A DNA stretch of 64,000 nucleotides. Source: Macrostomum lignano. Lineage: Eukaryota. The translations under genes were made by a program, and so were the position numbers. Below, one piece after another: positions 926-52,322 of the stretch. The stretch's first letter is position 1; each line of letters opens with the position of its first letter. The stretch covers positions 124,001-188,000 of the forward strand of contig NIVC01001344.1 in assembly GCA_002269645.1 (NCBI GenBank). Reading direction: 5' to 3'. A model generated the notes under the pieces. It was not told the origin of the DNA. It worked only from the letters and a program-made list of their open reading frames with translations, and did not search any database.

Positions 926-926
926 C

Positions 927-6559: not shown

Positions 6560-6990
6560 GGGCGGCCTGCGCTGCCCAGCTTGTCGGCCGAATCTTAGGC
6601 TTAGTCTGAATTTTACAGCCTGTCGAGTTGGGACTCCACAGGTGCGCCTGCGGCGGTTGCTAAGGCAGCTCTGGGATTTTCGAACTGATTCGAAAGCTCG
6701 ACGGCCTGGAGAGGCCGATGGCTGCAGCCGGAGACAGCTGTCCGTTGCCAAGCGGTTTCCGAGCGGTTTTCGAGCCCGGCCAGCCCAGGTGGCTGCGACT
6801 GCTGGAGCGACTCGAGCGATCCGAGTTGCCATGCCGGGCCCGAGGACGTTTGGGATTCGAGTTGAGTGAGGGGGCTGAGCTGAGGCTCTGGGGGCGAGGA
6901 GGAGTTCAGCTGTTCAGCGGAATCTTCAAGGAATGAGCGGATGGGCAAAGGGGCGGATTTCGGAGGTCAGATGGTGGATGGTGGAGTTAT
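6560..6990 (+). repeat. E element, diverged copy
   Basis: GTGCGCCTGCGGCGGTTGCTAAGGCAGCTCTGGGATTTTCGAAC...CTGGAGCGACTCGAGCGATCC core. Confidence 0.85.
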
Positions 6991-7139
6991 GATCGAGGTA
7001 GAGGGTAGAGGGTAAAGTGGATAGCAGAGAGTAGAGTCTAAGGTGGAGAGGGTAGAGGGTAGAGGGTAAAGTGGATAGCAGAGAGTAGAGTCTAAGGTGG
7101 AGAGGGTAGAGGGAAGAGCGGAAATCGCTTACTCGCTTA

Positions 7140-8092
7140 GTGACTCACGAACTCACTCATGAACTCACTCATGAACTCACTCATGAACTCACTCATGAAC
7201 TCACTCAAGAACTCACCCATGAACTCACTCAAGAACTCACTCATGAACTCACTCATGAACTCACTCATGAACTCACCCATGAACTCACTCATGAACTCAC
7301 TCATGAACTCACTCAAGAACTCACCCATGAACTCACTCAAGAACTCACTCATGAACTCACTCATGAACTCACTCATGAACTCACCCATGAACTCACTCAT
7401 GAACTCACTCATGAACTCACTCATGAACTCACTCATGAACTCACTCATGAACTCACTCATGAACTCACTCATGAACTCACTCATGAACTCACTCATGAAC
7501 TCACTCATGAACTCACTCATGAACTCACTCATGAACTCACTCATGAACTCACTCATGAACTCACTCATGAACTCACTCATGAACTCACTCATGAACTCAC
7601 TCAATGAACTCACTCATGAACTCACTAATGAACTCACTCACGAACTCACTCACGAACTCACTCATGAACTCACTCATGAACTCACTCATGAACTCACTCA
7701 ATGAACTCACTCATGAACTCACTAATGAACTCACTCACGAACTCACTCACGAACTCACTCATGAACTCACTCATGAACTCACTCATGAACTCACTCATGA
7801 ACTCACTCATGAACTCACTCAATGAACTCACTCATGAACTCACTCATGAACTCACTCAATGAACTCACTCATGAACTCACTCATGAACTCACTCATGAAC
7901 TCACTCATGAACTCACTCATGAACTCACTCATGAACTCACTCATGAACTCACTCATGAACTCACTCATGAACTCACTCAATGAACTCACTCATGAACTCA
8001 CTCATGAACTCACTCAATGAACTCACTCATGAACTCACTCATGAACTCACTCATGAACTCACTCATGAACTCACTCATGAACTCACTCATGA
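7140..8092. repeat. 12-bp minisatellite (GAACTCACTCAT)n
   Basis: Direct reading; recurs at 22991, 34260 and 47698. Confidence 0.95.
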
Positions 8093-8187
8093 ATGCACCG
8101 ACTTACTCACTTAACAAAATTTACTGAAAATATTAAGAAGAAATAATTGCTAGTAATAATATATCTGGTGCAAAAATTAACATAAAA

Positions 8188-8260
8188 TACCCCAGGAGGG
8201 ACTCGAACCCTCAACCTCCGGATTAGAAGTCCGACGCGCTATCCATTGCGCCACTGGGGC
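8188..8260 (-). tRNA. trnR-UCU: tRNA-Arg(TCT), intact, intronless
   Basis: 73-nt cloverleaf GCCCCAG TG GCGC AATGGATA GCGC G TCGGA CTTCTAA TCCGG AGGTT GAGGG TTCGAGT CCCTC CTGGGGT A; A and B boxes; T4 immediately downstream. Confidence 0.95.
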
Positions 8261-8519
8261 TGCCTGGTGGCTGAAATTTTAAATCCGAGTTTTATTCTCG
8301 CGCAGAAAATTGGTTTGTAAACAAGCTGGTCTGCTACAAGCCTGCCTGCCTTACCATGGCCTTCCCTCTGCTTATCTCATGGCACTTCTGCACACTGGCA
8401 CTTTCGCCTTCAAGACCTCTGCCCGTGCGTGCTGACTTCTCACTGACTGCTGCGTTCAGTCTCTTTATCTCCAAGACCTCTACTGTTTAGTTTATTTACC
8501 GGTACAACCGGTTGGAGCA

Positions 8520-8722
8520 GGGAAAAGGCTCAGGAGAGCAGGGAGAGGGCTCAGGAGAGCAGGGAGAGGGCTCAGGAGAGCAGGGAGAGGGCTCAGGAGA
8601 GTAGGGAGAGGGCTCAGGAGAGCAGGGAGAGGGCTCAGGAGAGCAGGGAGAGGGCTCAGGAGAGCAGGGAGAGGGCTCAGGAGAGCAGGGAGAGGGCTCA
8701 TGAGAGCAGGGAGAGGGCTCAG
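8520..8722. repeat. 21-bp minisatellite (GGCTCAGGAGAGCAGGGAGAG)n
   Basis: Direct reading. Confidence 0.9.
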
Positions 8723-8872
8723 CAGATGTTGAGATTGTTCAGAGGAGGGTAGAGAGGGTTCAGACTGACTGACTGATTGTGATGCAATCGAAGCAGGGCT
8801 TTAAATTCGAGTGTCAGCTCTGCATCTTGACAGCATGGCATGAACTCAACATATCTGAGTGATTGACCGCCT

Positions 8873-8970
8873 CAGCCAATGACAGGAGGGCATCATAGCC
8901 CAGCTTATCCGAGCTCAGCTTCCCATTGGCGGGAGATGAGGCGGGGCTCAGTGAGACAAAGACTATATAA
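8873..8970 (+). promoter_or_regulatory. Pol II core promoter of gene X copy A
   Basis: CAGCCAATG (8873), CCCATTGG (8921), GAGGCGGGGC GC box (8938), TATATAA (8964-8970); first downstream ATG at 9056. Confidence 0.7.
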
Positions 8971-9055
8971 CCAGCCTGCGCTGCTGGCCTCGAATCTCTC
9001 AAAGCATTCGCTTGCCATCCAACTGCTGCTCGTCAGTAACTCTGCACAATCGGTC

Positions 9056-10168
9056 ATGCAGCCGCCAAGCTCATCACCGCTGCTGGCCTCGCTGAGGTCC
9101 CCGCAGATGTCCTCGCTGTCGTCCTCGCCGATGGCCTCGCTGAGGTCCCCGCAGATGTCCTCGCTGTCGTCCTCGCCGACGGGCTCAATGAACTGCTCGC
9201 TGACGTCCCGATGCCTCTTGAAGCCATCGAGCTCATCACCACTGATGGCCTCGTTGATGTCCGGATTCTTCCCCACGCCGATGTCTCCGACAATGTCAAT
9301 GCCTCCGAAAATGCTGATGCCTCCGACAATGCCAATGCCTCCGAAAATGCCGATGCCTCCGACAATGCCGATGCCTCCGACAATGCTGATGCCTCCGAAA
9401 ATGCTGATGCCTCCGAAAATGCTGATGCCTCCGACAATGCCAATGCCTCCGAAAATGCCGATGCCTCCGACAATGCCGATGCCTCCGACAATGCTGATGC
9501 CTCCGACAATGCCGATGTCTCCGACAATGCCAATGCCTCCGACAATGTCAATGCCTCCGACAATGCTGATGCCTCCGACAATGCCAATGCCTCCGACAAT
9601 GTCAATCCCTCCGACAATGTCAATGCCTCCGACAATGCCGATGTCTCCGACAATGCCGATGCCTCCGACAATGTCGATGCCTCCGACAATGCTGATGCCT
9701 CCGACAATGCCGATGTCTCCGACAATGCCGATGTCTCCGACAATGCAGATGCCTCCGACATCCCAGCTGCCTCCGCCAGCGTCAACGCCGATGCCGTTCC
9801 CGGTGCCATCGCCGACGCCGCGAAGCTGCGGTTCAAAGCGCGGCTCCCTGACCTGCTGGCTGCCTCGTTGCTCCGGGACGGTGGCGGCCAGCGTGGCGTG
9901 GCTGCAGCGCCACATCGCTCGCCACGTTGACGTCGACGGGAACTGCGAGCTCTGCGCCGACTGCTCCGTGCTGCTGCCGCCGCTGCGGCCGATTCGGCCG
10001 ACGCCGAAGCTGTCAGAACGGCAGCGTCACGTGATCAGTCACGTGAACCAGCAGCTGCTCTTAGCCGGTGTCAGGCGCTCCTTCGGCTGCGGCAGCTGCG
10101 GCAGGGTCTTCATTCGGGCCGGCAGCGCCAGGAAGCACAACCTGGTGTGCAGGCGGGCTCGCGCATGA
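9056..10168 (+). CDS. Gene X copy A: C2H2/C2HC-finger protein with an expanded 18-bp (PPTMPM) repeat (370 aa)
   Basis: Continuous ORF from the first post-TATA ATG to FGCGSCGRVFIRAGSARKHNLVC; family not recognised. Confidence 0.7.
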   Translation: MQPPSSSPLLASLRSPQMSSLSSSPMASLRSPQMSSLSSSPTGSMNCSLTSRCLLKPSSSSPLMASLMSGFFPTPMSPTMSMPPKMLMPPTMPMPPKMPMPPTMPMPPTMLMPPKMLMPPKMLMPPTMPMPPKMPMPPTMPMPPTMLMPPTMPMSPTMPMPPTMSMPPTMLMPPTMPMPPTMSIPPTMSMPPTMPMSPTMPMPPTMSMPPTMLMPPTMPMSPTMPMSPTMQMPPTSQLPPPASTPMPFPVPSPTPRSCGSKRGSLTCWLPRCSGTVAASVAWLQRHIARHVDVDGNCELCADCSVLLPPLRPIRPTPKLSERQRHVISHVNQQLLLAGVRRSFGCGSCGRVFIRAGSARKHNLVCRRARA

Positions 10169-10445
10169 GTTGCTTGTTTTTGTCTTTTGCTTGTTTTTGT
10201 CTTTTGCTTGTTGTTCTTTTTTGCCGTTTGCTTGTTTTTGTCTTCTGCCTGTTTTGTCTTTTGCTTGTTTTTGTCTTTTGCTTATTTTTGTCCTTTGTTT
10301 GTTTTTGTCTTTTGCTTGTTTTTGTCTTTTGCTTGTTTTTGTCTTTTGCTTGTTTTTGTCCTTTGTTTGTTTTTGTCTTTTGCTTGTTTTTGTCTTCTGC
10401 TTGTTTTTGTCTTTTGCTTGTTTTTGTCTTTCGCTTGTTTATTTT
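10167..10445. repeat. 17-bp minisatellite (CTTGTTTTTGTCTTTTG)n
   Basis: Starts at the gene X stop codon. Confidence 0.9.
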
Positions 10446-10850
10446 GCAACTGTTGCTTTTGCTGGCGCTTTCGTGTCACAACCCGCTTTTCAATGTACAA
10501 AATACAAAACTGCCAGAAATATTTTCTGCCATTGTACAGACTGATAAACTATTCGTAAATCAGAGTTCCACATTTTCTTTACTTTGCATTCAAATTAGTT
10601 AAAGATGTGCGCAATGAGCTACTTATAGCAGCACTACAGAAATCATATTGAAATGAAATTAGAATTGAATTTATGGAAATTTATTGATAATTGCCCCAGC
10701 AACTCATGCTAATACCTACCTGTTGATTTCTCAGGAAGTTTTGTGTCAGATGCGAGCTGTGAGACTCGGCGTTGGGATGGCGATGGCGCGACAATCTACT
10801 ATTCACAAAACAGTTATGCTTTAATTCACAAGCAAAAAAGTAGCACTCAG

Positions 10851-10923
10851 TACCCCAGGAAGGACTCGAACCCTCAACCTCCGGATTAGAAGTCCGACGC
10901 GCTATCCATTGCGCCACTGGGGC
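10851..10923 (-). tRNA. trnR-UCU: tRNA-Arg(TCT) with C63T variant (G51:U63 wobble)
   Basis: Full cloverleaf; T-stem 3' strand reads CCTTC. Confidence 0.92.
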
Positions 10924-12409
10924 TTCGTTAGTCGAAGAAGCGAGTTTTGAACTTTAATTCTGAATTGCTTTGCCTGCTGAAAGCGGAGACTTCAATAGTG
11001 AGTAGCAGAAAATCCTGAGCAGCTGTTTCACTATTAGACTCAAGAAATTAAGCTAGAGTCAACTCAAACATGCTCAATAATTTGGTCACGAATCGAAAGT
11101 GTGAAATCGGTAACACCTCTGACTCTGAGCAACTATAGGCACGAGATTGGCAGAAGTTTTAGGGACCAACACAGCCGGTTAATGTGCTCCGCTGCACTGC
11201 AGAAGTGTGAGCAGCATTTCTGGCTATCTTAATCCCCTTGTACGCTTAGGCACTATTGTTGGACTCTGAAGGTGGCGTAGACTCCTCAAGCCATGGGCAT
11301 CTCAGCAGCTATAGACTACACTGCATCAAACATCACACATTTTCACACACTTTCGGACCCGACTTGAACCAAAACTTGAAATGGGGATCAGCGCAGAATC
11401 CCCTGCTGTGAGGCCGAATTCAGCTTAAATGCGAGTGGGAAGCTGGTTATGCATCATCGAGTCATTTCAAGGTGCGAAATTCCAAGGAGGCTGATCACAG
11501 TTGGGTGATGAAAGACCAACAGAATTACTACAAAAACAACAGCAGCTGGAGTGGTGGGGGCTCCGGAGTTCTGCCCCAAATTCGGTATACTGACTGAGCT
11601 GCAGCGATTCTGCAAATGCCTGTCCCTCTTTATTCACGCATTTCAACTGAGGCTGTGCCGCTCACTGCCTCGCTTCCCCGCGGACTGCCGCGGAAAATTA
11701 AAAGGGACGGAAAATGTGAGCAGAGTAGAGAGTTGCTGGTAGATGTGGGTAGAGGGTAGAGCGGAGACTGTAGACGGGAGAGTGAGGAGCTTAGAGCGGA
11801 GAGTAGTGAGAGGAGAGCGAAGAGGGTAGAGTGGAGAGATTATAGGGTAGAGTAGAGAGGGTAGAGAGAGCGAAGAGGGTAGAGGGTAGAGCGGAGAGGG
11901 TAGAGTGGAGAGTGGGAGAGGTAGAGGATAGACAGTAGATTAAGGGCTCTAATGGATTTAAGATTCTGATATCAAAATGCCGTACCCAGATGCGAGAATT
12001 TATTCAGCTACAAAACCAATGCAGATTCCCTAAAATCGAAGTCGCAACAACTGCAAACTCGCGCATCTTAAATCTGCAGTCAGTCCATGCTGGTGTCTGA
12101 ATTGCGGCTTTGGAGAAGGGCTGGCACCCCAGGCTCTGACTGCAGGCCTCCCTGCCCCATCCCAGCAACCGGCGCACCCAGTTCGGCTCGGCATCTCCGC
12201 TGGTTGCCAGGCGAATCGGCACAACTCGAACTGGGCTGTGCGAACACCTGGAGAGCTGAGTCGGCCTGAGCATCTCGCTGCATCATGGGCTGCTCCCAGG
12301 TGTCTCCAGCTGCTGCACAGCGGACCGCACCGCTTTGGCTGTCGGTTGCCGGGCGGCGGCCCCACAGAGGTGCGAAACTCGAGGGCGAGAGGCGGGTGGG
12401 TCCGGTGGG

Positions 12410-12488
12410 GCTGGAGCGACCGGAGCGATTTGGGTTGCCTTGCCGGGACCGAGGAGCTTTAGGATTGGAATTGGGTGAGGGGGCTGAG
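12410..12488 (+). repeat. E-element core (E3 type) within a GC-rich block (~12080-12490)
   Basis: About 90% identical by eye over ~80 bp to the E core; also at 26659-26737 and 37634-37712. Confidence 0.75.
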
Positions 12489-12529
12489 GGAGGTGAGTGA
12501 AGGATCTTTGGGTTTTGTGTTGCAGGCAG

Positions 12530-13120
12530 AGAGAGGAGAGGGTAGACATGAGACAGCACAGGACAGAGAGGAGTGGGTAGACATGAGACAGCAGCACAGA
12601 GCAGAGAGGAGAGGGTAGACATGAGACAGCACAGGGCAGAGAGGAGGGGGTAGACATGAGACACCACCGGGCAGAGAGGAGAGGGTAGACATGAGACAGC
12701 ACAGAGCAGAGAGGAGAGGGTAGACATGAGACAGCACAGAGCAGAGAGGAGAGGGTAGACATGAGACAGCACACAGCAGAGAGGAGAGGGTAGACATGAG
12801 ACAGCACACAGCAGAGAGGAGAGGGTAGACATGAGACAGCACAGAGCAGAGAGGAGAGGGTAGACATGAGACAGCACAGGGCAGAGAGGAGAGGGTAGAC
12901 ATGAGACAGCACACAGCAGAGAGGAGAGGGTAGACATGAGACAGCACAGAGCAGAGAGGAGAGGGTAGACATGAGACAGCACAGGGCAGAGAGGAGAGGG
13001 TAGACATGAGACAGCACAGGGCAGAGAGGAGAGGGTAGACATGAGACAGCACAGGGCAGAGAGGAGAGGGTAGACATGAGACAGCACAGGACAGAGATTA
13101 GGGGGTAGACATGAGACACA
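12530..13120. repeat. 35-bp minisatellite (GGGTAGACATGAGACAGCACAGAGCAGAGAGGAGA)n
   Basis: Direct reading. Confidence 0.95.
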
Positions 13121-13374
13121 GGAAGGGGAGAAAAGGCAAAGGGGAACTGAAAAGAGAGAGGGGGAAAGAGAATAAAGGTAGATAAAAGAGGGGATGAATA
13201 TATTTTTTATTGATAATTCACAGTTCATTTGGCAGTCACCTGTAAGCACAGATCTGTGACCCTCTCCCTCTCTCCAATCCCAAGGCTCTCATTCCACTTT
13301 AAACACCTGCTGTGTGAGCTCACTGAAATTCACAGTTAAATCTCAAATACTGCAATGGGAACGGATTAACACCA

Positions 13375-13447
13375 GCCCCAGTGGCGCAATGGATAGCGCG
13401 TCGGACTTCTAATCCGGAGGTTGAGGGTTCGAGTCCCTCCTGGGGTG
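13375..13447 (+). tRNA. trnR-UCU: tRNA-Arg(TCT), intact
   Basis: Full cloverleaf, discriminator G, T5 about 12 nt downstream. Confidence 0.95.
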
Positions 13448-13609
13448 TGATATGTAATTTTTGCAACGGAGAAATAAATATGATTTTAGCTTTGTTTTGT
13501 TTTTATTGTGGTAAATCGTACATATTGGTAGGAAACGGACTTCAGCTTTGAATTCCTGAAATATTACTAGATATGTGAGAAGCTCATGACTTCACGAGTG
13601 AGTTCATGA

Positions 13610-13840
13610 GGGGAGTCTGTGGGGTCAAGGGGAGTCTGTGGGGTCAAAAGGAGTCTGTGGGGTCAAGGGGAGTCAGTGGGGTCAAGGGGAGTCAGTGTGA
13701 TCAAGGGGAGTCAGTGGGGTCAATGGGAGTCACAGGGGTCAGGAGGAGTCAGTTTGATCAAGGGGAGTCAGTGGGGTCAAGAGGACTCAGTGGGGTCAAG
13801 GGGAGTCAGTTTGATCAAGGGGAGTCAGTGGGGTCAAGGG
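13610..13840. repeat. 20-bp G-rich minisatellite (GGGGTCAAGGGGAGTCAGTG)n
   Basis: Direct reading. Confidence 0.9.
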
Positions 13841-14114
13841 GTTTCATGTTGCACCCTTTGAGCTCCGTGACGTCATCGGGTTGTTTGACTTGAATACAAT
13901 TTTTAACGCAACTTGAGTCTTTGGGCGATGCAGCGCAGGATCTGGTTGTTTATGATTTGTACCCTAAGTGAGCTCATCCAACGTCATGATTTCGATTCGC
14001 AAGTTTGCCATACAATTAACATTGATACTACGCTCGTACTAATGCTTTTTATTATTGCAATATATACCTTACATTGTATCAGTACTTTATTTATGCAATC
14101 GTAAAATATATAAT

Positions 14115-14835
14115 CCGCCGCTCCTCTGACACTCCTCAATCCGCTCCTCTGACACTCCTCAATCCGCTCCTCTGACACTCCTCAATCCGCTCCTCTGACA
14201 CTCCTCAATCCGCTCCTCTGACACTCCTCAATCCGCTCCTCTGACACTCCTCAATCCGCTCCTCTGACACTCCTCAATCCGCTCCTCTGACACTCCTCAA
14301 TCCGCTCCTCTGACACTCCTCAATCCGCTCCTCTGACACTCCTCAATCCGCTCCTCTGACACTCCTCAATCCGCTCCTCTGACACTCCTCAATCCGCTCC
14401 TCTGACACTCCTCAATCCGCCCCCCCTCTGACACTCCTCAATCCGCCCCCCCTCTGACACTCCTCAATCCGCTCCTCTGACACTCCTCAATCCGCTCCTC
14501 TGACACTCCTCAATCCGCTCCTCTGACACTTCTCAATCCGCTCCTCTGACACTCCTCAATCCGCTCCTCTGACACTCCTCAATCCGCTCCTCTGACACTC
14601 CTCAATCCGCTCCTCTGACACTCCTCAATCCGCTCCTCTGACACTCCTCAATCCGCTCCTCTGACACTCCTCAATCCGCTCCTCTGACACTCCTCAATCC
14701 GCTCCTCTGACACTCCTCAATCTGCTCCTCTGACACTCCTCAATCCGCTCCTCTGACACTCCTCAATCCGCTCCTCTGACACTCCTCAATCCGCTCCTCT
14801 GACACTCCTCAATCCGCTCCTCTGACACTCCTCTC
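14115..14835. repeat. 23-bp minisatellite (CCGCTCCTCTGACACTCCTCAAT)n upstream of nanos
   Basis: Direct reading. Confidence 0.95.
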
Positions 14836-43900: not shown

Positions 43901-45283
43901 GGGGCGGATGGTTGAGGTCCGAGGGGCGGATGGTTGAGGTCCGAGGGGCGGATGGTTGAGGTCCGAGGGGCGGATGGTTGAGGTCCGAGGGGCGGATAAG
44001 GCATTTAAAAGTCTTCACCAACCCTACAGCAAAGCTCAGTCTGATGTGAAATGTGAGCTTACTGTTTGTCAATGCGGCTGCCTACCTGTGATTTATGGCT
44101 TTGAGATTTGGCCCAGCGCTGCTGCCATTGGCGGAGGCCTTGTTGTGTTCGCAGCTCGGAGCCGAGTGTGGGAATCTGCGGTGGGGAATATCTGGGAGGA
44201 TCTGTGAACCGCTGCCCTCCCACGCTTCTCTTGGTTATTAGGCTCTCGTGCTCTCTTTTGTGTTGTGCCTGGATTCCCATGGGAAACTGCTGCCCAATGC
44301 AAGGAGAGCTAGAAATCTATGGAAGTGGCAACCACAAAATATTGAGCCTTGAATGTTTGCTCAAACAAGGAATATTTTCTCACCATCCTTCTGATTGCAC
44401 TTGTTCATGCAATTGCAAGTTCACCAAACACCGTTTACTCAGGATAATAGCACAAGAGCGCACTGACACAAGCGCACACTGACACAAGAGCGCACTGACA
44501 CAAGAGCGCACTGACACAGGAGCGCACTGACACAATAGCGCACTGACACAAGAGCGCACTGACACAAGAGCGCACTGACACAAGAGCACACTGACACAAG
44601 AGCGCACTGACACAAGAGCGCCCTTTACTGAAACTGCACTCCCCCGTAGATCCTGACACTGACGCCCCTCTATAGATCCTGACACCCTATAAGAGACCTA
44701 GACTTTTCTATAGGGTTCCTGACACTTCTGAATATCCTGACATCCCTTTTACACACACTGACACTAGGGCATACTCCATGAATCCTGACACCGCCCTACA
44801 GATTCTGACACCTAGATAGATCCTGACACAGCTTTGACAGATCCTGACATTCCTCTGAAGATCCTGACATCCCTCAGTAGATACTGACACCCCTCTGTAG
44901 ATCCTGACAACCCTCTGTAGATCCTAACACCCCTCTGTAGATCCTGACCCCTCTGTAGATCCTGACACCACTGTGTAGATAGTGACACTCCTGTGTAGAT
45001 CCTGACACCCCTCTGTAGATCCTGACCCCCTCTGTAGATCCTGACATCCCTCAGTAGATCCTGACACCCCTCTGTAGATCCTGACAACCCTCTGTAGATC
45101 CTGACACCCCTCTGTAGATCCTGACCCCCTCTGTAGATCCTGACACTCCTGTGTAGATCCTGACACTCCTGTGTAGATCCTGACACACCTCTGTAGATCC
45201 TGACCCCTCTGTAGATCCTGACACCACTCTACAGATACTGACACAAACAATGAAAAATTCGAAAGCATCCCTCAAAATTTCAG

Positions 45284-46092
45284 TTCACGACTCCAAGCAC
45301 TCAAACCGGAGCGGGCAGCCTCGCAGGCTCAGCTTCCGATGTTGCGCCCGCTGCAGTGTCAGCTGGACTCAAACATAAAACAGAATTCTGCCGCAACTTT
45401 GAAGTGAGTCCACAGCTCTGCTGCTCTGCAATTGAGTCCTGTTTGCCGCTTTGGCTGACTCATTTTTGTAAAACCGCCCCTCGTTACCTCTGGCATCCAC
45501 ACAATCTGCCCCTAATCCTCTCTGACAACTCCACAATCTATACCCCTGACAAGTCTCCAGCCGCCCCTGACAAGTCTCCAGCCGCCCCTGACAAGTCTCC
45601 AGCTGAATCCACCCCGGGGCCGTAGCCCAGCGGTCTAGCGCAGGCTCTGGTGTGCCAGCGACCCAGGCTCGATTCCAAGTGCAGTCACATTAATTTGGGG
45701 CTGAATTGGAATCTCGGCTTGGCTCTGCTCGTGCAATTAACGGTCTTGAGAGCCGACCCCCCAAGGCGCAGTGAAGTGTACATGCCTAACGATAAAATAA
45801 AGTTAGGGCCGGTGTACACTCCTGTGTGAGTGTGTGCCTGCGTACGTATCCGCGCGCTTGTGTGCCTGCTCAGGGGAGTCGGCGGAATGGGCAGTAATGC
45901 CTCTTGCCGGTTGTGTGCCAATGTCGCTTAAAGTGCGCCAGGGTGCACACAACCCCCCTGCCTCTAATAACAAAAATCCACCCCGCACACCCGCAGCTCA
46001 GTGGCACCTGCCCATTTTCCAGCCGCTGCCAGTTCTCCCACGGCCCCGAGGAACGGCCCCGATGGAGGATATCCCCATCTCACTGGCACTGA
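45284..46092 (+). CDS. CCCH gene copy C; exons 45284-45403 and 45997-46092; single intact finger, finger 2 deleted
   Basis: KHKTEFCRNFE|LSGTCPFSSRCQFSHGPEE followed by a new tail RPRWRISPSHWH*; may be a pseudogene. Confidence 0.65.
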
Positions 46093-46989
46093 TTGTGGCT
46101 CACTGGCACTTATTGTGGCTCACTGGCACTTATTGTGACTCACTGGCACTGATTGTGGCTCACTGGCACTTATTGTGACTCACTGGCACTGATTGTGGCT
46201 CACTGGCACTTATTTTGACTCACTGTCACCGATTGTGACTCATTGGCACTGATTGTGACTCTCTGGTACTGATTGTGACTCACTGGCACTTACTGTGACT
46301 CACTGGCACTTACTGTGACTCAGTGTCATTGATTGAGACTCACTGGCACTGATTGTGGCTCACTGGCACTGATTGTGGCTCACTGGCACTTATTTTGACT
46401 CATTGGCACTGATTGTGACTCACTGGCACTGATTGTGGCTCACTGGCACTGATTGTGGCTCACTGGCACTTATTGTGACTCACTGGCACTGATTGTGGCT
46501 CAATGGTAATGATTGTGGCTCAATGGCACTGATTGTGACTTACTGGCACTGATTGTGTGACTCACTTGCACTGATTGTGTGACTCACTGGCACTGATTGT
46601 GACTCACTGGCACTGATTGTGGCTCACTGGCACTGATTGTGACTCACTGGCACTGATTGTGACTCACTGGCACTGATTGTGGCTCACTGGCACTGATTGT
46701 GGCTCACTGGCACTGATTGTGGCTCACTGGCACTGATTGCGGCTCACTGGTAATGATTGTCGCATTAAGCCAGGACTGAAACGGAAGGAAAAGAAAAACA
46801 ACTTCTGAAGATCTAGGACGCCTAAATCTTAGTATCTTGAGCTTCTAAACTTGCTGTCGATTTGAGAAGCAGATTTCGGAAATTATTTTTACAGTTTTAG
46901 CGAGGCAAAGATTGGCAGACTGCATGAAATTCTTAGGTGAATTGCTTAAAGGTAATTTTTTGTTTCAAAATCTTTCCTTCCTTCCCTAA

Positions 46990-47610
46990 CGGTTAGGGTT
47001 CATGACACCAAATTTTACATCGACGAAGGCAGCGAGTTAAGCCTACAAGCCCCAACCTTATGCTTTACGCCTTCACACCTTCATGCAGCTCAAATATATC
47101 AGTGGTAGAGCTACCAAGGCGGAGAATTCCCACCCCCCGCTGGGCAGTTCGGCCAGTTCGGCTTGGCACTCCTTGTTGGCCGGTCTGTGCTATTTTTAGA
47201 ATCAGTCGAGATGAGACTCCACAGGTGCGCCTGCGGCGGTTGCTAAGGCAGCTCTGGGATTTTCGAACCGATTCGAAAGCTCGACTTCAAAGCTCGAAAG
47301 TTCGAAATCTCGGCGGGCTGGAGAGACCGATGGCTGCAGCCGGAGACAGCTGTCCGTTGCCAAGCGGTTTCCGAGCGGGAATTCGCGGTCGCCTCTCGGC
47401 CAGCCCAGGTGGCTGCGGCTGCTGGAGCGACTCGAGCGATCCGGGTTGCCATGCCGGGCCCGAGGAGGTTTGGGATTCGAGTTGGGTGAGGGGGCTGAGC
47501 TGAGGCCGTGGGAGAGAGGAGGAATTCGGCGGATTCTTGGCGGAGGGGCGGATTTGGGAGGTTTGCAGGTCTGATTACAGAGATTTCGAGGGGCGGATCG
47601 CGGAGGTCAG
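46990..47610 (+). repeat. E element (E2 type)
   Basis: Near-identical to 22270-22900. Confidence 0.85.
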
Positions 47611-47697
47611 AGGGTAGAAGGTAAAGTAGAGACCGGAAATGCTAGAGGCTTGAGAGGAAGTGGAGAGTGGAGAGAGTAGCGGAGAGAGTAGAGAGGG

Positions 47698-48062
47698 TCA
47701 CTCACTCACTCACTCATTCACTCATTAACTCATGAACTCACCCATGAACTCACTCATGAACTCACTCATGAACTCACCCATGAACTCACTCATGAACTCA
47801 CCCATGAACTCACTCATGAACTCACTCATGAACTCACCCATGAACTCACTCATGAACTCACCCATGAACTCACTCATGAACTCACCCATGAACTCACTCA
47901 TGAACTCACCCATGAACTCACTCATGAACTCACCCATGAACTCACCCATGAACTCACCCATGAACTCACTCATGAACTCACTCATGAACTCACCCATGAA
48001 CTCACCCATGAACTCACTCATGAACTCACCCATGAACTCACTCATGAACTCACTCATGAATT
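47698..48062. repeat. (CACT)n/(GAACTCACYCAT)n array
   Basis: Direct reading. Confidence 0.9.
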
Positions 48063-48161
48063 CACGAACTAACCAGCAGAGTTATGAATTCAGTAAGTCA
48101 CTCTCTTACCACAATTTACTGAGAACCTTCACCTCAGGAGTTAACCAGAAGTTAACTAACT

Positions 48162-48234
48162 CACCCCAGGAGCGACTCGAACCCTCAACCTCCAGATTAA
48201 AAGACCAAAGCGCTATCCATTGCGCCACTGGGGC
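48162..48234 (-). pseudogene. tRNA-Arg-derived pseudogene with TTT anticodon
   Basis: Same sequence as 23346-23418. Confidence 0.85.
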
Positions 48235-48617
48235 TGCCGGGTGACTGCCATTTTAGCGTTAGATTTTCACAAATTGATTAAATTAAATTTGAATTGATTA
48301 AATTGATTGGTAAACAAACTGGTCTGCTACATGCATTGCCCATCTAACCATGGCCTTCTCTCTGCCTTTAATAATCTCAGCTCACTTCTGTAAGTTCTGC
48401 ACACTGACTGAGTGACTGACTGACTCAGTGGGGACCAGCCTGCAGTGGGGATTCAGCTCATGGGGATGGGGATCTCATGGGGACTGAGTATTATCAGTTA
48501 CTGGAAAGCTGGCAGTACGAGAACTTCACAGCATTTGACAAAGCAACTCATGAACCGCCTCGCAAAATCCACTTTTGCCTACCCTTCTCTGCCCTGCCTC
48601 CTAGATTTTCCTCTCTC

Positions 48618-49095
48618 CCCCTGTCACTCTCCCACCCTGTCACTCTCCCACCCTGTCACTCTCCCACCCTGTCACTCTCTCCGGCCCTGTCACTCTCCCA
48701 CCCTGTCACTCTTCCACCCTGTCACTCTCCCACCCTGTCACTCTCCCACCCAGTCACTCTCCCCCCTGTCACTCTCCCACCCTGTCACTCTCCCACCCTG
48801 TCACTCTCCCACCCTGTCACTCTCCCACCCTGTCACTCTCCCACCCTGTCACTCTCCCACCCGGTCACTCTCCCACCCAGTCACTCTCCCACCCTGTCAC
48901 TCTCCCACCCTGTCACTCTCCCACCCTGTCACTCTCCCACCCTGTCACTCTCCCACCCGGTCACTCTCCCACCCTGTCACTCTCCCACCCTGTCACTCTC
49001 CCACCCTGTCACTCTCCCACCCTGTCACTCTCCCACCCTGTCACTCTCCCACCCTGTCACTCTCCCACCCTGTCACTCTCCCACCCTGTCACTCC
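48618..49095. repeat. 16-bp minisatellite (CCCTGTCACTCTCCCA)n
   Basis: Reverse complement of the 2236 array. Confidence 0.95.
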
Positions 49096-49570
49096 GGTTG
49101 ATGATTTCGTCTGCTATGTTCCCGATCTTGTTCTGGAGAAAAGAGAGAGGTAAGAAAGGAAGAGGTAGAGAGAAAGGAAGAGAGGTAAGGAGGAAGGGGG
49201 AAATTAGAATATAGAAGAGAAGAGCGGAGAAAGGAGAGGAGAGGAGAGGAGAGAGGAGAGGATAGAGAGAAGAGAGGAGAGAGGAGAGGAGAAAGAGAGG
49301 AGAGACATGGAGAAGACACTAAGAAGGGATCGAAGAAAATCCGGAAGGAATTTGGATGGGATGGGATGACTTCAAACGCGAGAAGCAAACTCCCATTCAT
49401 TCAAGTACTTTATTCCCTTCTCAACTTCAGCAATTTTTAACAATAAAAATCAATACAATAAATTCCAAATCATCCCAAAATCATCCCGATTTCACCCCAA
49501 CAACAAACAGCGGATGCAGTCGAGATGACAGCATGGCATGAACTCAACATATCTGAGTGATTGACCGCCT

Positions 49571-49668
49571 CAGCCAATGACAGGAGGGCATCATAGCCCA
49601 GCTTATCCGAGCTCAGCTTCCCATTGGCGGGAGATGAGGCGGGGCTCAGTGAGACAAAGACTATATAA
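49571..49668 (+). promoter_or_regulatory. Gene X copy D promoter
   Basis: CCAAT at 49574 and TATATAA at 49662. Confidence 0.65.
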
Positions 49669-49753
49669 CCAGCCTGCGCTGCTGGCCTCGAATCTCTCAA
49701 AGCATTCGCTTGCCATCCAACTGCTGCTCGTCAATAACTCTGCACAATCGGTC

Positions 49754-50596
49754 ATGCAGCCGCCAAGCTCATCACCGCTGCTGGCCTCGCTGAGGTCCCC
49801 GCAGATGTCCTCGCTGACGTCCTCGCCTATGGCCTCGCTGACGGGCTCAATGAACTGCTCGCTGACGTCCCGATGCCTCTTGAAGCCATCGAGCTCATCA
49901 CCACTGATGGCCTCGTTGATGTCCGGATTCTTCCCCACGCCGATGTCTCCGACAATGCTGATGCCTCCGACGATGCCGATGTCTCCGACAATGCCGATAC
50001 CTCCGACAATGCCGATGCCTCCGACAATGCCGATACCTCCGACAATGCTGAAGCCTCCGACAATGCCGATGCCTCCGACAATGCCGATGTCTCCGACAAT
50101 GCCGATGTCTCCGACAATGCCGATGCCTCCGACAATGCCGAAGCCTCCGACAATGCCGATGCCTCCGACAATGCCGATGCCTCCGACATCCCAGCTGCCT
50201 CCGCCAGCGTCAACGCCGATGCCGTTCCCGGTGCCATCGCCGACGCCGCGAAGCTGCGGTTCAAAGCGCGGCTCCCTGACCTGCTGCCTGCCTCGCTGCT
50301 CCGGGACGGTGGCGGCCAGCGTGGCGCGGCTGCAGCGCCACATCGCTCGCCACGTTGACGTCGACGGGAACTGCGAGCTCTGCGCCGACTGCTCCGTGCT
50401 GCTGCCGCCGCTGCGGCCGATTCGGCCGACGCCGAAGCTGTCAGAACGGCAGCGTCACGTGATCAGTCACGTGAACCAGCAGCTGCTCTTAGCCGGTGTC
50501 AGGCGCTCCTTCGGCTGCGGCAGCTGCGGCAGGGTCTTCATTCGGGCCGGCAGCGCCAGGAAGCACAACCTGGTGTGCAGGCGGGCTCGAGCATGA
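49754..50596 (+). CDS. Gene X copy D (280 aa), fingers intact
   Basis: C-terminal finger region identical in protein to copy 0. Confidence 0.7.
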   Translation: MQPPSSSPLLASLRSPQMSSLTSSPMASLTGSMNCSLTSRCLLKPSSSSPLMASLMSGFFPTPMSPTMLMPPTMPMSPTMPIPPTMPMPPTMPIPPTMLKPPTMPMPPTMPMSPTMPMSPTMPMPPTMPKPPTMPMPPTMPMPPTSQLPPPASTPMPFPVPSPTPRSCGSKRGSLTCCLPRCSGTVAASVARLQRHIARHVDVDGNCELCADCSVLLPPLRPIRPTPKLSERQRHVISHVNQQLLLAGVRRSFGCGSCGRVFIRAGSARKHNLVCRRARA

Positions 50597-51397
50597 GTTG
50601 GCTGTTTTTGTCTATTGCTTGTTTTTGTCTTTTGCTTGTTGTTCTTTTTTGCCGTTTGCTTGTTTTTGTCTTTAGCTTGTTTTTGTCTCTTGCTTGTTTC
50701 TTTTGTAACTGTTGATTTTGCTGGCCCGCTTTTTCAATGTACAAAATACAAAACTTACAAAAATATTTTCCGCCGTTGTACAGACTGAGAAAAATATTTG
50801 TAAATCATAGTTTAAGATTTTCTTTACTTTGCATTCATATTAGTAAAAGATGTGCGCAATTGACTACTTATAGAATCACTGCAGAAATCATGCTGAATAT
50901 GAAATTAGTGAATTTATGGAAATGTATCCCCCACTTGCCCCGGGCGAACGTCTGTGGTCTCAGTGTAAATTTCATTTATTTGCATCGGTGCAAATAAACG
51001 GTTTATTTCACTCGCCCAAAGACAATATTAAAACGCTGTTTCTAACTGCTCACTTGGCTACATAGAGAGAATTGTCTGAAACATTCACCGCATGTCTGAA
51101 TCTGCAGAATATGGTATAGAAATTCTGCTATAGACCATAGACATCGAATCATTTTTAATAAATTGTCTTAACATTCTCAAATGTGGAGCCCCCACACCCC
51201 CGCAAGGAGGCTAAGCGCCCCCTTGGCCCCGCTTTCCCTGTTACCATTTATTGATAGTTGCCCTACGTGTTGATTTCTCGAGTTTTGTGCCAGATGCAAG
51301 CTGTAGACACGGCTGTGGGATGGCGATGGCAAGACAGTCTACGGTGCGATAAACATAAAGTTGTGGTTTCATTTATGAACAAAAAAGTAGCACTCAA

Positions 51398-51470
51398 TAC
51401 CCCAGGAGGGACTCGAACCCTCAACCTCCGGATTAGAAGTCCGACGCGCTATCCATTGCGCCACTGGGGC
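51398..51470 (-). tRNA. trnR-UCU: tRNA-Arg(TCT), intact
   Basis: Full cloverleaf, T6 downstream. Confidence 0.95.
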
Positions 51471-52322
51471 TTCGGTAGTTGACAAGCGAGTTTTCAACTT
51501 TAATTCTGAATTGCTTTGCCTGCTGAAAGCGGAGACTTCAATGGTGAGTAGCAGAAAGTCTTGAGCAGCTGTTTCGCTATTAGACTCAGAAAAAAAAATT
51601 GAGTAAGTTGGAGTCAACTTTAGCGTGCTCAATAATTTGTTCACGAGTTGAAAGAGTCGGTTGGGCAACACCTCTGGTTCTGCAGAGCAGCTGTCGAGTT
51701 CGGAAAAAAAAATGTTTCTTCAAAAATTTTTGTTCAAGAATAGCTTACTATTATCTAGACTCGCTTATCTTAGATCTGCTAATGTCTGAATTGCGGCTTT
51801 GGAGAAGGGCTGGCACCCCAGGCTCTGGCTGCAGGCCTCCCTGCCCCATCCCAGCAACCGGCGCACCCAGTTCGGCTCGGCATCTCCGCTGGTTGCCAGG
51901 CGAATCGGCACAACTCGAACTGGGCTGTGCGAACACCTGGAGAGCTGAGTCGGCCTGAGCATCTCGCTGCATCATGGGCTGCTCCCAGGTGTCTCCAGCT
52001 GCTGCACAGCGGACCGCACCGCTTCGGCTGTCGGTTGCCGGGCGGCGGCCCCACAGAGGTGCGAAACTCGAGGGCGAGACAGCTGGGGACTTCGGTGTGA
52101 AAGCGGGTTCAGAGCCACAACAATCCCGCTTGGAAACCGCTCACTCACTCATGAACGCATAACTTAAAAACTTCTGAACTGATTCACTCATGAACTCATT
52201 CATGAACTCGCATGTCTAGTAATATTTCAGGAATTTAAAGTATGTAATCTGTTTTTTACCACAACTGACTGAAAACTTTAAAAACAAAAGTTCATTTATT
52301 TGTTGCAAAAATGAACTTAATA

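What the first reader, a model, noticed from the sequence alone, without database searches (positions are those of the whole stretch)
6560..52100. Tandemly amplified 'nanos + CCCH + C2H2/C2HC finger + tRNA-Arg' cassette
Seen: an 11-15 kb unit repeats in constant order about 3.5 times. The order is E, 12-bp array, (pseudo)tRNA, gene X, tRNA(-), E3, 35-bp array, tRNA(+), nanos, E, CCCH gene. All three nanos copies keep an intact RNA-binding domain. Known: Nanos and tandem-CCCH proteins are post-transcriptional regulators central to germline and stem-cell programmes, and nanos is usually present as a few dispersed genes. Inference: this is a co-amplified module of RNA- and DNA-binding regulators. 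It could be a germline dosage array, a birth-and-death gene nursery, or cargo of a selfish, supernumerary or germline-restricted segment. I know of no described locus with this composition, but could not search.
Basis: partly seen in the sequence, partly recalled or inferred. Interest (0 to 1): 0.9.

Follow-up and report, generated by a model that had tools for sequence, protein, structure and literature searches.

The report
Tandem nanos–zinc-finger–tRNA-Arg gene array in flatworm
A stretch of Macrostomum lignano-like flatworm DNA holds a real, young tandem duplication of an 11-15 kb unit; each unit keeps an intact nanos gene and tRNA-Arg genes, while two neighbouring zinc-finger genes are being lost copy by copy, which is interesting but an ordinary kind of gene-family turnover.

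Summary
Window 6551-52959 is a head-to-tail array of three full units (14.1, 11.0 and 15.1 kb) plus partial, more diverged edge copies. Unique segments are about 99% identical. An inverted partial unit lies at 1-5497.

Each full unit carries:
- an intact nanos zinc-finger gene (Pfam E about 1e-24);
- two canonical tRNA-Arg(UCU) genes and one shared pseudo-tRNA;
- three E-type repeats;
- about ten hypervariable minisatellites (42% of the window).

It is a TTP/TIS11-like tandem zinc-finger gene with a GT..AG intron inside finger 1. It is complete in only one of three units, and its second finger lacks a cysteine in every copy. 'Gene X' is an orphan Cys/His-rich ORF. It is intact at two of four direct positions, plus once in the inverted arm.

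The closest proteins are Macrostomum lignano nanos models. Some of these contain the same combination of pieces in arrangements not collinear with the window.

Best reading: a recent, recombination-homogenised segmental duplication undergoing birth-and-death. I found no evidence for selected dosage, for a functional three-gene module, or for a selfish or germline-restricted origin.

It is a new member of a known kind. Interest is moderate (0.35).

The parts
6551..52959 (+). Whole direct array: P0 (6551-10493), U1 (10494-24641), U2 (24642-35616), U3 (35617-50700), P4 (50701-52959)
   Evidence: Collinear self-BLAST matches at 97-99.9% identity. The edge copies P0 and P4 are only 80-92% identical in places.
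1..5497 (-). Inverted partial unit (left arm). In reverse order: tRNA(-) flank, 17-bp array, gene X copy A, 16-bp array, E, and the region downstream of the CCCH gene with part of its intron. CCCH exon 2 is deleted.
   Evidence: Inverted BLAST matches to 8828-10885 and to 20353-22431.
15481..16158 (+). nanos copy 1, first in-frame ATG to stop (225 aa). It includes the 18-bp (APLPAx)n minisatellite at 15539-15885, 19.3 copies.
   Evidence: Pfam zf-nanos E 1.5e-23; TRF; GC3 0.94.
29776..30291 (+). nanos copy 2 (171 aa), with 10.4 copies of the 18-bp repeat
   Evidence: Pfam zf-nanos E 1.9e-24.
41325..41822 (+). nanos copy 3 (165 aa), with 9.4 copies of the 18-bp repeat
   Evidence: Pfam zf-nanos E 3.8e-24; PDB 3ALR E 1e-19.
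16160..17703 (+). 22-bp minisatellite that starts directly after the nanos stop codon, so it is the presumed 3'UTR. Its counterparts are 30372-31097 and 41824-42715. Copy numbers are 66.8, 32 and 39.8.
   Evidence: TRF. An AATAAA signal lies just beyond the array in U3, near 42800.
20177..20296 (+). CCCH (TTP-like) gene, exon 1 in U1. It ends ...KHKTEFCRSFE and is followed by a GTGAGT donor.
   Evidence: Sequence read directly; tblastn.
20890..21057 (+). CCCH gene, exon 2 in U1, preceded by a polypyrimidine tract and CAG acceptor. It encodes LSGTCPFASHCQFSHGPEELR...YKTEACRAFHGAEGVRRYGNCCHFIH and a stop.
   Evidence: The spliced product hits TIS11d/TTP structures at E 1e-14 to 1e-16. Pfam zf-CCCH scores 22.9 bits against a cut-off of 20.5.
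32392..32559 (+). CCCH exon 2 in U2. Exon 1 is deleted from this unit.
   Evidence: U2 lacks the counterpart of 19408-20854.
45284..45403 (+). CCCH exon 1 in U3 (KHKTEFCRNFE)
45997..46053 (+). Truncated CCCH exon 2 in U3. Homology ends at 46052, so finger 2 is lost.
8879..10168 (+). Gene X copy B (429 aa): N block, 24/48-bp and 18-bp coding minisatellites, and a Cys/His-rich C block
   Evidence: ORF; copy comparison; GC3 0.84 in the C block. No Pfam hit and no homologue.
927..1916 (-). Gene X copy A (329 aa), in the inverted arm
   Evidence: Its C block is 100% identical to that of copy D.
49577..50596 (+). Gene X copy D (339 aa)
23937..24640 (+). Gene X copy C: frameshifted after about codon 56, and the C-terminal finger block is deleted (pseudogene)
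8188..8260 (-). tRNA-Arg(TCT), intact, in P0. It sits at the position held by the pseudo-tRNA in U1-U3.
   Evidence: ARAGORN; Rfam 71.7 bits; T-run terminator.
10850..10923 (-). tRNA-Arg(TCT)
13375..13447 (+). tRNA-Arg(TCT)
23346..23418 (-). Pseudo-tRNA: an Arg-TCT derivative read as Lys-TTT, with no terminator
   Evidence: Rfam gives only 46.2 bits.
24823..24896 (-). tRNA-Arg(TCT)
28076..28148 (+). tRNA-Arg(TCT)
34895..34969 (-). Pseudo-tRNA
35798..35871 (-). tRNA-Arg(TCT)
39433..39505 (+). tRNA-Arg(TCT) with a G1-to-T change in the acceptor stem
   Evidence: Rfam 66.3 bits.
48162..48234 (-). Pseudo-tRNA
51398..51470 (-). tRNA-Arg(TCT) in the edge copy P4
52323..52395 (-). tRNA-Arg(TCT), an inverted copy of the tRNA(+) position at the right edge
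18305..18800 (+). E element (E1 class) between nanos and the CCCH gene. Counterparts: 31145-31521 and 43317-43812.
   Evidence: Alignment A1, with a core of about 330 bp that is nearly invariant.
22464..22990 (+). E element (E2 class) before the 12-bp array. Counterparts: 6551-6946, 33734-34104, 47183-47697, and inverted at 3892-4520.
12088..12440 (+). E3, a diverged relative of E that lies between the two divergent tRNA genes. Counterparts: 26337-26690, 37312-37665 and 51777-52091.
12530..13118 (+). 35-bp minisatellite. Counterparts: 26779-27819 and 37754-39179. Copy numbers are 16.7, 29.7 and 40.8.
   Evidence: TRF.
7143..8093 (+). 12-bp ACTCATGAACTC minisatellite. Counterparts: 23020-23249, 34290-34799 and 47728-48065. 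Copy numbers are 78.8, 19.2, 43.2 and 28.2.
   Evidence: TRF.

Best explanation
The locus is a real, evolutionarily young tandem segmental duplication, macrosatellite-like with 11-15 kb units. It sits in an exceptionally minisatellite-rich region of a Macrostomum lignano(-like) flatworm genome.

The array most likely arose, and is kept about 99% homogeneous, by unequal crossing-over and gene conversion between units. The dispersed E repeats, tRNA genes and minisatellites offer many substrates for this exchange.

The cargo is evolving by birth-and-death:
- The lineage-specific nanos paralogue is intact in every unit. It has two CCHC zinc knuckles and an N-terminus encoded by a length-variable 18-bp minisatellite.
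- The tRNA-Arg(UCU) genes are likewise intact: two canonical genes per unit, with Pol III terminators.
- These two are the copies most likely to be functional. Nanos would act as a translational repressor of germline or stem-cell mRNAs; the tRNAs would supply AGA decoding.
- The TTP-like tandem CCCH gene and the orphan Cys/His ORF 'gene X' are being lost copy by copy through deletions.

Shown: the structure, the domain integrity, the splice structure of the CCCH gene, the pattern of losses, and the mosaic similarity between units.

Inferred: the mechanism of homogenisation, the functionality of nanos and the tRNAs, and the absence of selection for the three-gene combination.
For: - Three units plus edge copies are collinear and about 1% diverged over 5.7-7.0 kb of unique sequence per pair.
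- Edge copies and the inverted arm are more diverged, 80-92% in several blocks. Arrays homogenised by exchange in their interior are expected to look like this.
- The closest pair of units changes along the unit. U2 and U3 are nearest at 11940-12529, 14834-15538 and 22063-22643. U1 and U2 are nearest at 13119-14117. U1 and U3 are nearest at 15889-16159 and 23250-23753. This indicates recombination or conversion between units.
- Every minisatellite differs in copy number between units.
- Nanos: Pfam E 1e-23 to 1e-24 in all three copies; PDB nanos E 1e-19; all Zn ligands kept; 4 synonymous against 3 non-synonymous changes; GC3 0.94.
- tRNAs: 9 copies score 66-72 bits and carry T-run terminators. 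The 3 pseudo-copies share the same mutations, so the decay predates the U1-U3 amplification.
- CCCH gene: canonical GTGAGT donor and CAG acceptor at phase 0 rebuild a perfect C-x8-C-x5-C-x3-H finger. The spliced product matches TIS11d/TTP across both fingers. Exon 1 is deleted in U2, exon 2 is truncated in U3, and exon 2 is deleted in the inverted arm.
- Gene X: intact at two of four direct positions plus once in the inverted arm; one copy broken and one deleted.
- The ORFs of U1 that I scanned show no transposase or RT domain.
- M. lignano gene models P0002, P0005 and P0007 contain pieces of nanos, E, E3 and the CCCH region in other arrangements. Related loci therefore exist elsewhere or in another assembly.
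- Published background: in M. lignano, simple and tandem repeats make up 15% of the genome, and 180 Mb lies in duplicated non-repetitive blocks at least 95% identical (PMC5730564).
Against: - No reads were available, so the true copy number and the correctness of the assembly are unverified.
- No expression data could be reached for any of the genes. Six exact-protein look-ups found nothing.
- The nanos 5' end is unresolved. There is no upstream in-frame ATG beyond MQYLRQQ; an SL-donated AUG is possible, but that rests on my memory of flatworm trans-splicing.
- With only 7 substitutions, purifying selection on nanos is not demonstrated (binomial p about 0.07).
- The units are so young that intact ORFs would be expected even without selection.
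Confidence: 0.6

Rival explanations
1. Selected germline or stem-cell dosage module. Nanos, the TTP-like CCCH protein and gene X act together as post-transcriptional or DNA-binding regulators, and they were co-amplified because higher joint dosage is advantageous.
For: All three protein genes lie on the same strand in constant order. This is compatible with the polycistronic, trans-spliced transcription units common in M. lignano (PMC5730564). Nanos and TTP-family proteins both recruit deadenylation machinery (established knowledge). Nanos-CCCH linkage recurs in other M. lignano gene models, P0002, P0005 and P0007. Nanos dN/dS is about 0.25.
Against: Only 1 of 3 units has a complete CCCH gene, and finger 2 lacks its second Cys in every copy. 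Gene X is lost at 2 of 4 direct positions and has no homologue. Linkage in other loci is what any segmental duplication would produce. There is no expression evidence.
Confidence: 0.13
2. Entirely inert, decaying segmental duplication. All protein-coding copies, nanos included, are unexpressed relics. The intact ORFs merely reflect the youth of the duplication.
For: Nanos coding blocks are as diverged as the flanks: 0.7-1.9% against about 1%. The nanos stop codon abuts a 0.7-1.5 kb minisatellite, and U2 has lost the downstream segment that carries AATAAA. No clear start codon or promoter was found. Neighbouring genes are visibly decaying.
Against: All eight Zn ligands and the domain score are retained in all three copies and in more distant paralogues, P0002, P0007 and P0008, which are 85-95% identical in the domain. 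The excess of synonymous changes and a GC3 of 0.94 are coding signatures. The tRNA genes keep terminators, whereas the pseudo-tRNA lost its own.
Confidence: 0.14
3. Assembly artefact. Homeologous or allelic copies from the hidden-polyploid, karyotypically polymorphic genome were concatenated, or a repeat was over-expanded, so the true locus has fewer units.
For: The M. lignano assemblies are known to be redundant and repeat-rich (PMC5730564). 42% of the window is minisatellite, which is hard to assemble.
Against: The units are not identical. They differ by unit-specific deletions, by copy number in every minisatellite and by about 1% substitutions, in a mosaic pattern. The edges are more diverged than the interior. 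There are no Ns or gaps. Related M. lignano gene models (P0005, P0007) also contain two nanos domains, in arrangements not collinear with the window.
Confidence: 0.1
4. Cargo of a selfish element or of a supernumerary or germline-restricted chromosome segment.
For: The gene content is germline-type. The architecture is ampliconic and partly palindromic. [quoted passage not shown]
Against: No transposase, RT or terminal-repeat signature was found among the ORFs of U1 that I scanned. The tRNA genes have unit-specific flanks and terminators and are not SINE heads. I know of no report of programmed DNA elimination in Macrostomum. Ordinary-looking unique genic sequence follows at 55.8-60.3 kb.
Confidence: 0.03

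Closest known systems
Gene-bearing macrosatellites and ampliconic germline gene arrays (for example the human TSPY 20-kb array, the D4Z4/DUX4, CT47 and GAGE arrays, and the Y-chromosome palindromes)
   Same: Multi-kb units lie head to tail at 98-99% identity or more. The cargo is of germline type. There are signs of exchange between copies, and a partly palindromic arrangement. This comparison rests on my own knowledge of those loci.
   Different: Only about 3.5 units are visible here. The chromosomal location is unknown. Units also carry Pol III tRNA genes and are 40% minisatellite. Copy-number polymorphism and germline expression are untested.
Tandem tRNA gene clusters (the Xenopus 3.18-kb tRNA repeat, the zebrafish chromosome 4 tRNA arrays, and the Entamoeba tRNA arrays with interspersed short tandem repeats)
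   Same: Repeated units carry several tRNA genes of both orientations, interspersed with short tandem repeats. Pseudo-tRNA copies sit among functional ones. This comparison rests on my own knowledge.
   Different: Here there is a single isoacceptor, Arg-UCU. The units are far larger and contain protein-coding genes.
Nanos paralogue expansions (Lepidoptera nos-N/M/O/P; two nanos genes in Schistosoma; NANOS1-3 in vertebrates)
   Same: Lineage-specific multiplication of nanos with the zinc-finger domain conserved. Multi-domain nanos gene models in Tuta absoluta, Tetranychus, Galendromus and Coryphaenoides point to adjacent nanos genes in other animals. The Lepidopteran paralogues are described in PMC3654919. 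Schistosoma has two nanos genes (PMC11398382).
   Different: The copies here are about 99% identical and sit in a uniform large repeat unit. The N-terminus is encoded by a length-variable minisatellite. They are co-duplicated with a TZF gene and tRNA genes.
TTP/TIS11 (ZFP36) tandem CCCH zinc-finger proteins
   Same: The lead-in motifs are present (KHKTEFC and LYKTEAC). Finger 1 is C-x8-C-x5-C-x3-H, the linker resembles the family's, and finger 2 ends in CHFIH. The product aligns over both fingers to 1RGO, 1M9O and 9Y10 at E 1e-14 to 1e-16.
   Different: The predicted product is minimal, about 96 aa, with no visible N- or C-terminal effector regions. Finger 2 has Arg in place of the second Cys, plus a one-residue insertion. 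An intron splits finger 1.

Membership tests
Nanos (PF05741) | Two consecutive CCHC zinc knuckles: C-x2-C-x12-H-x10-C and C-x2-C-x7-H-x4-C | tested here: met
   A regex over the six-frame translation finds the full pattern three times. Pfam scores 83-86 bits against a cut-off of 27. PDB 3ALR and 5KL1 match at E 1e-19 and 1e-18.
Nanos (PF05741) | N-terminal NOT1-interacting motif, as in vertebrate Nanos1-3 (not universal in the family) | tested here: not met
   No FxxWxDYLGL-like motif appears in the open frame upstream of the finger. The motif definition is from memory. Its absence does not exclude membership.
Nanos (PF05741) | Germline or stem-cell expression and Pumilio-dependent translational repression | not testable with these tools
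   No transcript or functional data could be reached.
TTP/TIS11 tandem CCCH zinc finger | First finger C-x8-C-x5-C-x3-H, preceded by an (R/K)YKTEL-type lead-in | tested here: met
   Joining 20296 to 20890 (GTGAGT...CAG, phase 0) gives KHKTEFCRSFELSGTCPFASHCQFSH. Pfam zf-CCCH scores 22.9 bits against a cut-off of 20.5. This is present in U1 and U3 only.
TTP/TIS11 tandem CCCH zinc finger | Second C-x8-C-x5-C-x3-H finger, 18 residues after the first | tested here: not met
   The HMMER alignment to 1RGO and 9Y10 puts Arg at the second Cys and adds one residue, giving CRAFHGAEGVRRYGNCCHFIH. The same sequence is found in U1, U2 and model P0005. Finger 2 is absent from U3.
Eukaryotic tRNA-Arg(UCU) gene | Cloverleaf with a TCT anticodon, and a Pol III T-run terminator shortly downstream | tested here: met
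   Nine copies are called by ARAGORN, score 66-72 bits in Rfam against a cut-off of 29, and have a run of four to six T residues within about 20 nt downstream. The three 'Lys-TTT' calls are mutated Arg copies without terminators and score 46-48 bits.
Tandem segmental duplication or macrosatellite array | Head-to-tail multi-kb units of high identity in constant internal order | tested here: met
Tandem segmental duplication or macrosatellite array | Copy-number polymorphism between individuals, and verification by spanning reads | not testable with these tools
   No reads and no other assemblies are available.
C2H2/C2HC zinc-finger protein (gene X) | A recognisable zinc-finger domain by profile or by fold | tested here: inconclusive
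   The motifs C-x4-C-x13-H-x3-H and F-x-C-x2-C-x12-H-x4-C are visible. However, Pfam zf-C2H2 gives only 10.8 bits against a cut-off of 25.2. The AF2 model has pLDDT 45, with a beta-beta-alpha element at the last motif. No homologue was found.
Transposon or selfish element | Transposase, RT or integrase domain, or terminal repeats bounding the unit | tested here: not met
   No Pfam domain was found in a selection of the non-repeat ORFs of at least 55 aa from U1 and the flanks; not all 118 such ORFs were scanned. The array edges decay gradually rather than ending in terminal repeats.
Germline-restricted or supernumerary chromatin | Presence in germline DNA but absence from soma, or variable presence between individuals | not testable with these tools
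   This requires tissue-specific read depth, qPCR or FISH.

The most novel reading that the evidence does not exclude
The direct array and its inverted partner form a palindromic ampliconic locus maintained by gene conversion. It supplies neoblast or germline dosage of a Macrostomum-specific nanos whose disordered N-terminus and 3'UTR are length-polymorphic minisatellites, and it may still pair that nanos with a minimal TTP-like partner. Copy number would vary between worms, perhaps with the known large-chromosome polymorphism. That would give a natural dosage series for a core germline determinant in a transgenic flatworm model.
Probability: 0.12. Interest if true: 0.6.

Novelty: new member of a known kind. 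Interest (0 to 1): 0.35.

Why it matters
Macrostomum lignano is a transgenesis-capable model for stem cells, regeneration and germline biology. If its main nanos family sits in near-identical tandem copies, three practical points follow:
- Knock-outs and RNAi will hit several copies at once.
- Expression estimates from short reads will be collapsed across copies.
- The public gene models for this region, such as A0A1I8JQP0 and A0A1I8F3U0, are chimeric read-throughs of repeats and should not be used as protein sequences.

In evolutionary terms, the locus is a clean snapshot of birth-and-death inside a young array. One gene is kept in every unit and two are being lost. A shared pseudo-tRNA dates the amplification relative to the tRNA decay.

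It does not reveal a new kind of genetic system.

Tried and rejected
1. Two of the three large protein searches gave nothing useful for nanos. The full nanos ORF was swamped by its low-complexity repeat. The domain-only query found no candidate sharing enough short words. The exhaustive representative search gave the identification instead.
2. A gene X composite query found no homologue. Pfam found nothing significant. The single-sequence AF2 model was poor, pLDDT 45, so no fold search was run.
3. Six exact-protein look-ups for nanos and gene X products found no encoding contigs or transcripts.
4. The M. lignano model P0005 led to the intron-split finger.
5. I considered a cis-spliced upstream exon for nanos (ATG...AG|GTGAGT at 41101-41146). 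Joining it to the acceptor at 41264 is out of frame, so I rejected it.
6. The E element as a structured RNA: z-scores are -0.15 and +0.76, so there is no signal.
7. Rfam found nothing except tRNAs.
8. The open frame of the gene X blocks is not significant on its own in 70% GC sequence (P about 0.07 per frame). GC3 periodicity was the more useful test.
9. Literature searches found no description of a Macrostomum nanos gene or array. Wasik et al. 2015 is not held.
10. An apparent IS1595/ISXO2-like transposase remnant at 62.3-63.4 kb got no Pfam support.

Full report
**Source and context**

The window is eukaryotic. It has about 50% G+C, no Ns, and 26,701 of 64,000 bases (42%) are masked by Tandem Repeats Finder.

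The exhaustive protein search with the nanos domain gave 1871 hits. The best (85-91% identity in the hit table) are UniRef 'Nanos-type domain-containing protein' entries of Macrostomum lignano: A0A1I8F3U0, A0A1I8F7U6 and A0A1I8JQP0. Stretches of model P0005 are 97.5-100% identical to translations of the window. The DNA is therefore M. lignano or a very close relative (Platyhelminthes, Macrostomorpha).

Published work describes this genome as follows (PMC5730564):
- More than half of it is repetitive, and 15% is simple or tandem repeats.
- 180 Mb lies in duplicated non-repetitive blocks at least 95% identical.
- 39% of genes are trans-spliced, and polycistronic precursors occur.

Yes. Self-BLAST of the masked window gives collinear direct matches that define these pieces:
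- P0, 6551-10493, partial.
- U1, 10494-24641, 14.1 kb.
- U2, 24642-35616, 11.0 kb.
- U3, 35617-50700, 15.1 kb.
- P4, 50701-52959, partial, with an inverted end.

Unique blocks are about 1% diverged in every pairwise comparison.

Unit length differs for two reasons. Every minisatellite differs in copy number between units; for example the 35-bp array has 16.7, 29.7 and 40.8 copies, and the 22-bp array has 66.8, 32 and 39.8. There are also unit-specific deletions.

Three features point to a genuine array homogenised by unequal exchange or gene conversion, rather than a pasted assembly duplicate:
- The edge copies P0 and P4 are only 80-92% identical in several blocks.
- The pseudo-tRNA of U1-U3 is still an intact tRNA-Arg in P0.
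- The closest pair of units changes along the unit.

Without reads, however, the copy number is unverified.

Window 1-5497 is an inverted partial unit, collinear in reverse with 8828-10885 and 20353-22431. The locus is therefore partly palindromic around a centre at roughly 5500-6550, and the window starts inside the inverted arm.

**nanos**

Three ORFs (15481-16158, 29776-30291 and 41325-41822, from the first in-frame ATG) end in a complete nanos domain.
- Pfam PF05741 scores 83-86 bits against a cut-off of 27.
- Zebrafish and Drosophila nanos structures match at E 1e-19 and 1e-18.
- Both CCHC knuckles have canonical spacing.

Upstream of the domain the protein is encoded by an 18-bp minisatellite, (APLPAx)n, with 19.3, 10.4 and 9.4 copies. 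The stop codon abuts the 22-bp minisatellite, which would form most of the 3'UTR. An AATAAA follows the array in U3. U2 has lost the segment that follows the array in U1 and U3.

Outside the repeat, the three copies differ by 4 synonymous and 3 non-synonymous changes over about 129 synonymous and 384 non-synonymous sites. This gives dN/dS of about 0.25 and a one-sided binomial p of about 0.07. GC3 is 0.94. These are coding signatures but not proof of current selection. The coding blocks are no better conserved than the flanks.

The 5' end is unresolved. A good acceptor (…cccgcag|GAA) lies in frame at 41264/41265. From memory, flatworm spliced leaders can donate an AUG; I could not test this.

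A second, more distant M. lignano nanos exists: A0A1I8JQX0, about 55-60% identical in the finger and with unrelated flanks. The arrayed genes are therefore one of at least two nanos lineages.

**CCCH gene**

My first motif scan found no CCCH finger. Model P0005 contained 'CQFSHGPEELRGRPDCHRLYKTEACRAFHG', which maps to 20914-21033 and 32416-32535.

Reading the DNA shows:
- Exon 1 (20177-20296) ends …KHKTEFCRSFE, followed by a GTGAGT donor.
- Exon 2 (20890-21057) follows a pyrimidine tract and CAG, and begins LSGTCPFASHCQFSHGPEELR.

Splicing at phase 0 rebuilds a perfect C-x8-C-x5-C-x3-H finger. The 96-residue product, with a hypothetical initiator Met added, matches TIS11d (1RGO), TTP (1M9O) and 9Y10 over both fingers at E 1e-14 to 1e-16. 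It also passes the Pfam zf-CCCH cut-off.

There are two important qualifications:
- In the second finger the second cysteine is Arg and one residue is inserted (alignment). This is the same in U1, U2 and P0005.
- The gene is complete only in U1. U2 lacks exon 1, because the counterpart of 19408-20854 is deleted. U3 loses exon 2 after 46052. The inverted arm lacks exon 2.

Exon 1 shows no GC3 enrichment (0.45), whereas exon 2 does (0.82).

**Gene X**

ATG-to-stop ORFs of 329, 429 and 339 aa (927-1916 on the minus strand, 8879-10168 and 49577-50596) share three parts:
- an N block;
- 24/48-bp and 18-bp coding minisatellites;
- a 136-residue C block with C-x4-C-x13-H-x3-H, CxxCxxC…HxxxH and F-x-C-x2-C-x12-H-x4-C motifs.

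The copy at 23937-24640 is frameshifted and lacks the C block. The position at the U2/U3 junction is deleted altogether.

The evidence on whether it codes is mixed:
- There is no homologue and no significant Pfam hit.
- The AF2 model is poor, pLDDT 45, with only a beta-beta-alpha element at the last motif.
- The open frame is not significant on its own in 70% GC DNA.
- GC3 is 0.84 against 0.64 and 0.61 at positions 1 and 2 in the C block, which resembles nanos and argues that this block is, or recently was, coding.

I treat gene X as a plausible orphan Cys/His-finger gene that remains unproven.

**tRNAs and repeats**

Nine tRNA-Arg(UCU) genes score 66-72 bits and have T-run terminators. One of them (39433) has a G1-to-T acceptor change. 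Three 'tRNA-Lys' calls are Arg derivatives with shared mutations, no terminator and only 46-48 bits. Their flanks are specific to their position in the unit, so they are genes rather than SINE heads.

E elements occur twice per unit, plus the related E3. They share a core of about 330 bp that is almost invariant even between the E1 and E2 classes. They show no unusual RNA fold and appear as spurious 'exons' in M. lignano gene models. Their class is unknown.

A selection of the non-repeat ORFs of at least 55 aa from U1 and the flanks showed no other Pfam domain; not all 118 such ORFs were scanned. Rfam finds only the tRNAs.

**Interpretation**

The simplest account is a young tandem segmental duplication, kept homogeneous by exchange between units, with cargo evolving by birth-and-death. 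Nanos and the tRNA-Arg genes are retained in every unit. The TTP-like gene and gene X are eroding.

The recurrence of nanos, E, E3 and CCCH pieces in models P0002, P0005 and P0007, in arrangements not collinear with this window, shows that related loci exist elsewhere in the genome or in another assembly. This is expected after the recent whole-genome duplication described for this species (PMC7053086).

Nothing here demonstrates selection for dosage, a functional three-gene module, or a selfish or germline-restricted origin. These remain low-probability alternatives that need reads, expression data and copy-number assays.

**Comparison with what is known**

The locus resembles several known systems:
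- Gene-bearing macrosatellites and ampliconic germline gene arrays.
- Tandem tRNA clusters.
- Lineage-specific nanos expansions. Four paralogues are described in Lepidoptera (PMC3654919), and two in Schistosoma (PMC11398382). Multi-domain nanos models occur in several arthropods and a fish.

I found no description of a Macrostomum nanos gene or array.

The composition is new, but the kind of locus is not. I rate it a new member of a known kind, with interest 0.35.

Noticed in passing
window 56374-58796: A 2.4-kb (ATCT)n microsatellite of about 597 copies at 96% identity. It sits between two open frames (55847-56374 and 58843-60225) that both encode Q-rich sequence, so it may lie in an intron, or even within a gene.
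   Followed up: partly
window 55847-56374 and 58843-60225 (+): Two long ORFs of 175 and 460 aa. The second carries a (GCA)n polyQ/H tract at 59694-59874. Neither has a Pfam hit. They are probably exons of an ordinary single-copy gene flanking the array.
   Followed up: partly
window 62300-63400 (-): ORF fragments such as ...GVNVEIDKSKFMHRKYHQGQ... looked to me like an IS1595/ISXO2-type DDE transposase remnant. Pfam gave no hit even at E of 1 or below. The resemblance is from memory only.
   Followed up: yes
window 60000-64000: G+C drops to 37-40% and minisatellites stop, so the array lies at a compositional boundary.
   Followed up: no
window 53177-55011: Two adjoining arrays of 18 bp (45 copies) and 23 bp (42 copies), about 1.8 kb in total, lie just outside the amplified region.
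   Followed up: no
window 1-164: The window starts inside the inverted copy of the tRNA(-) flank. The matching tRNA-Arg gene is cut by the window edge, so a further inverted unit or array may lie upstream.
   Followed up: partly
window 926-1334 vs 50189-50597: The gene X C block of the inverted arm is 100% identical over 409 bp to the copy 49 kb away in U3, yet only 99.0% identical to the nearer copy at 9761-10169. This suggests recent conversion between inverted copies.
   Followed up: partly
P0002, P0005, P0007, P0008 (UniRef M. lignano models): These public 'Nanos-type domain-containing proteins' of 379-633 aa are chimeric read-throughs. They combine nanos, E/E3 repeats, antisense frames and CCCH fragments, and are annotation artefacts rather than real proteins.
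   Followed up: yes
P0030 (A0A1I8JQX0): A second, more distant M. lignano nanos lineage, about 55-60% identical in the finger. It has none of the array's flanking repeats and may be the dispersed or ancestral copy.
   Followed up: partly
window 8515-8726 vs 48611-49094, 2214-2994 and 35351-35440: Upstream of gene X, P0 carries a 21-bp array. U3, the inverted arm and the U2/U3 junction carry a 16-bp array (CTCTCCCACCCTGTCA) at the same place. Arrays are therefore replaced, and not only resized, between copies.
   Followed up: no
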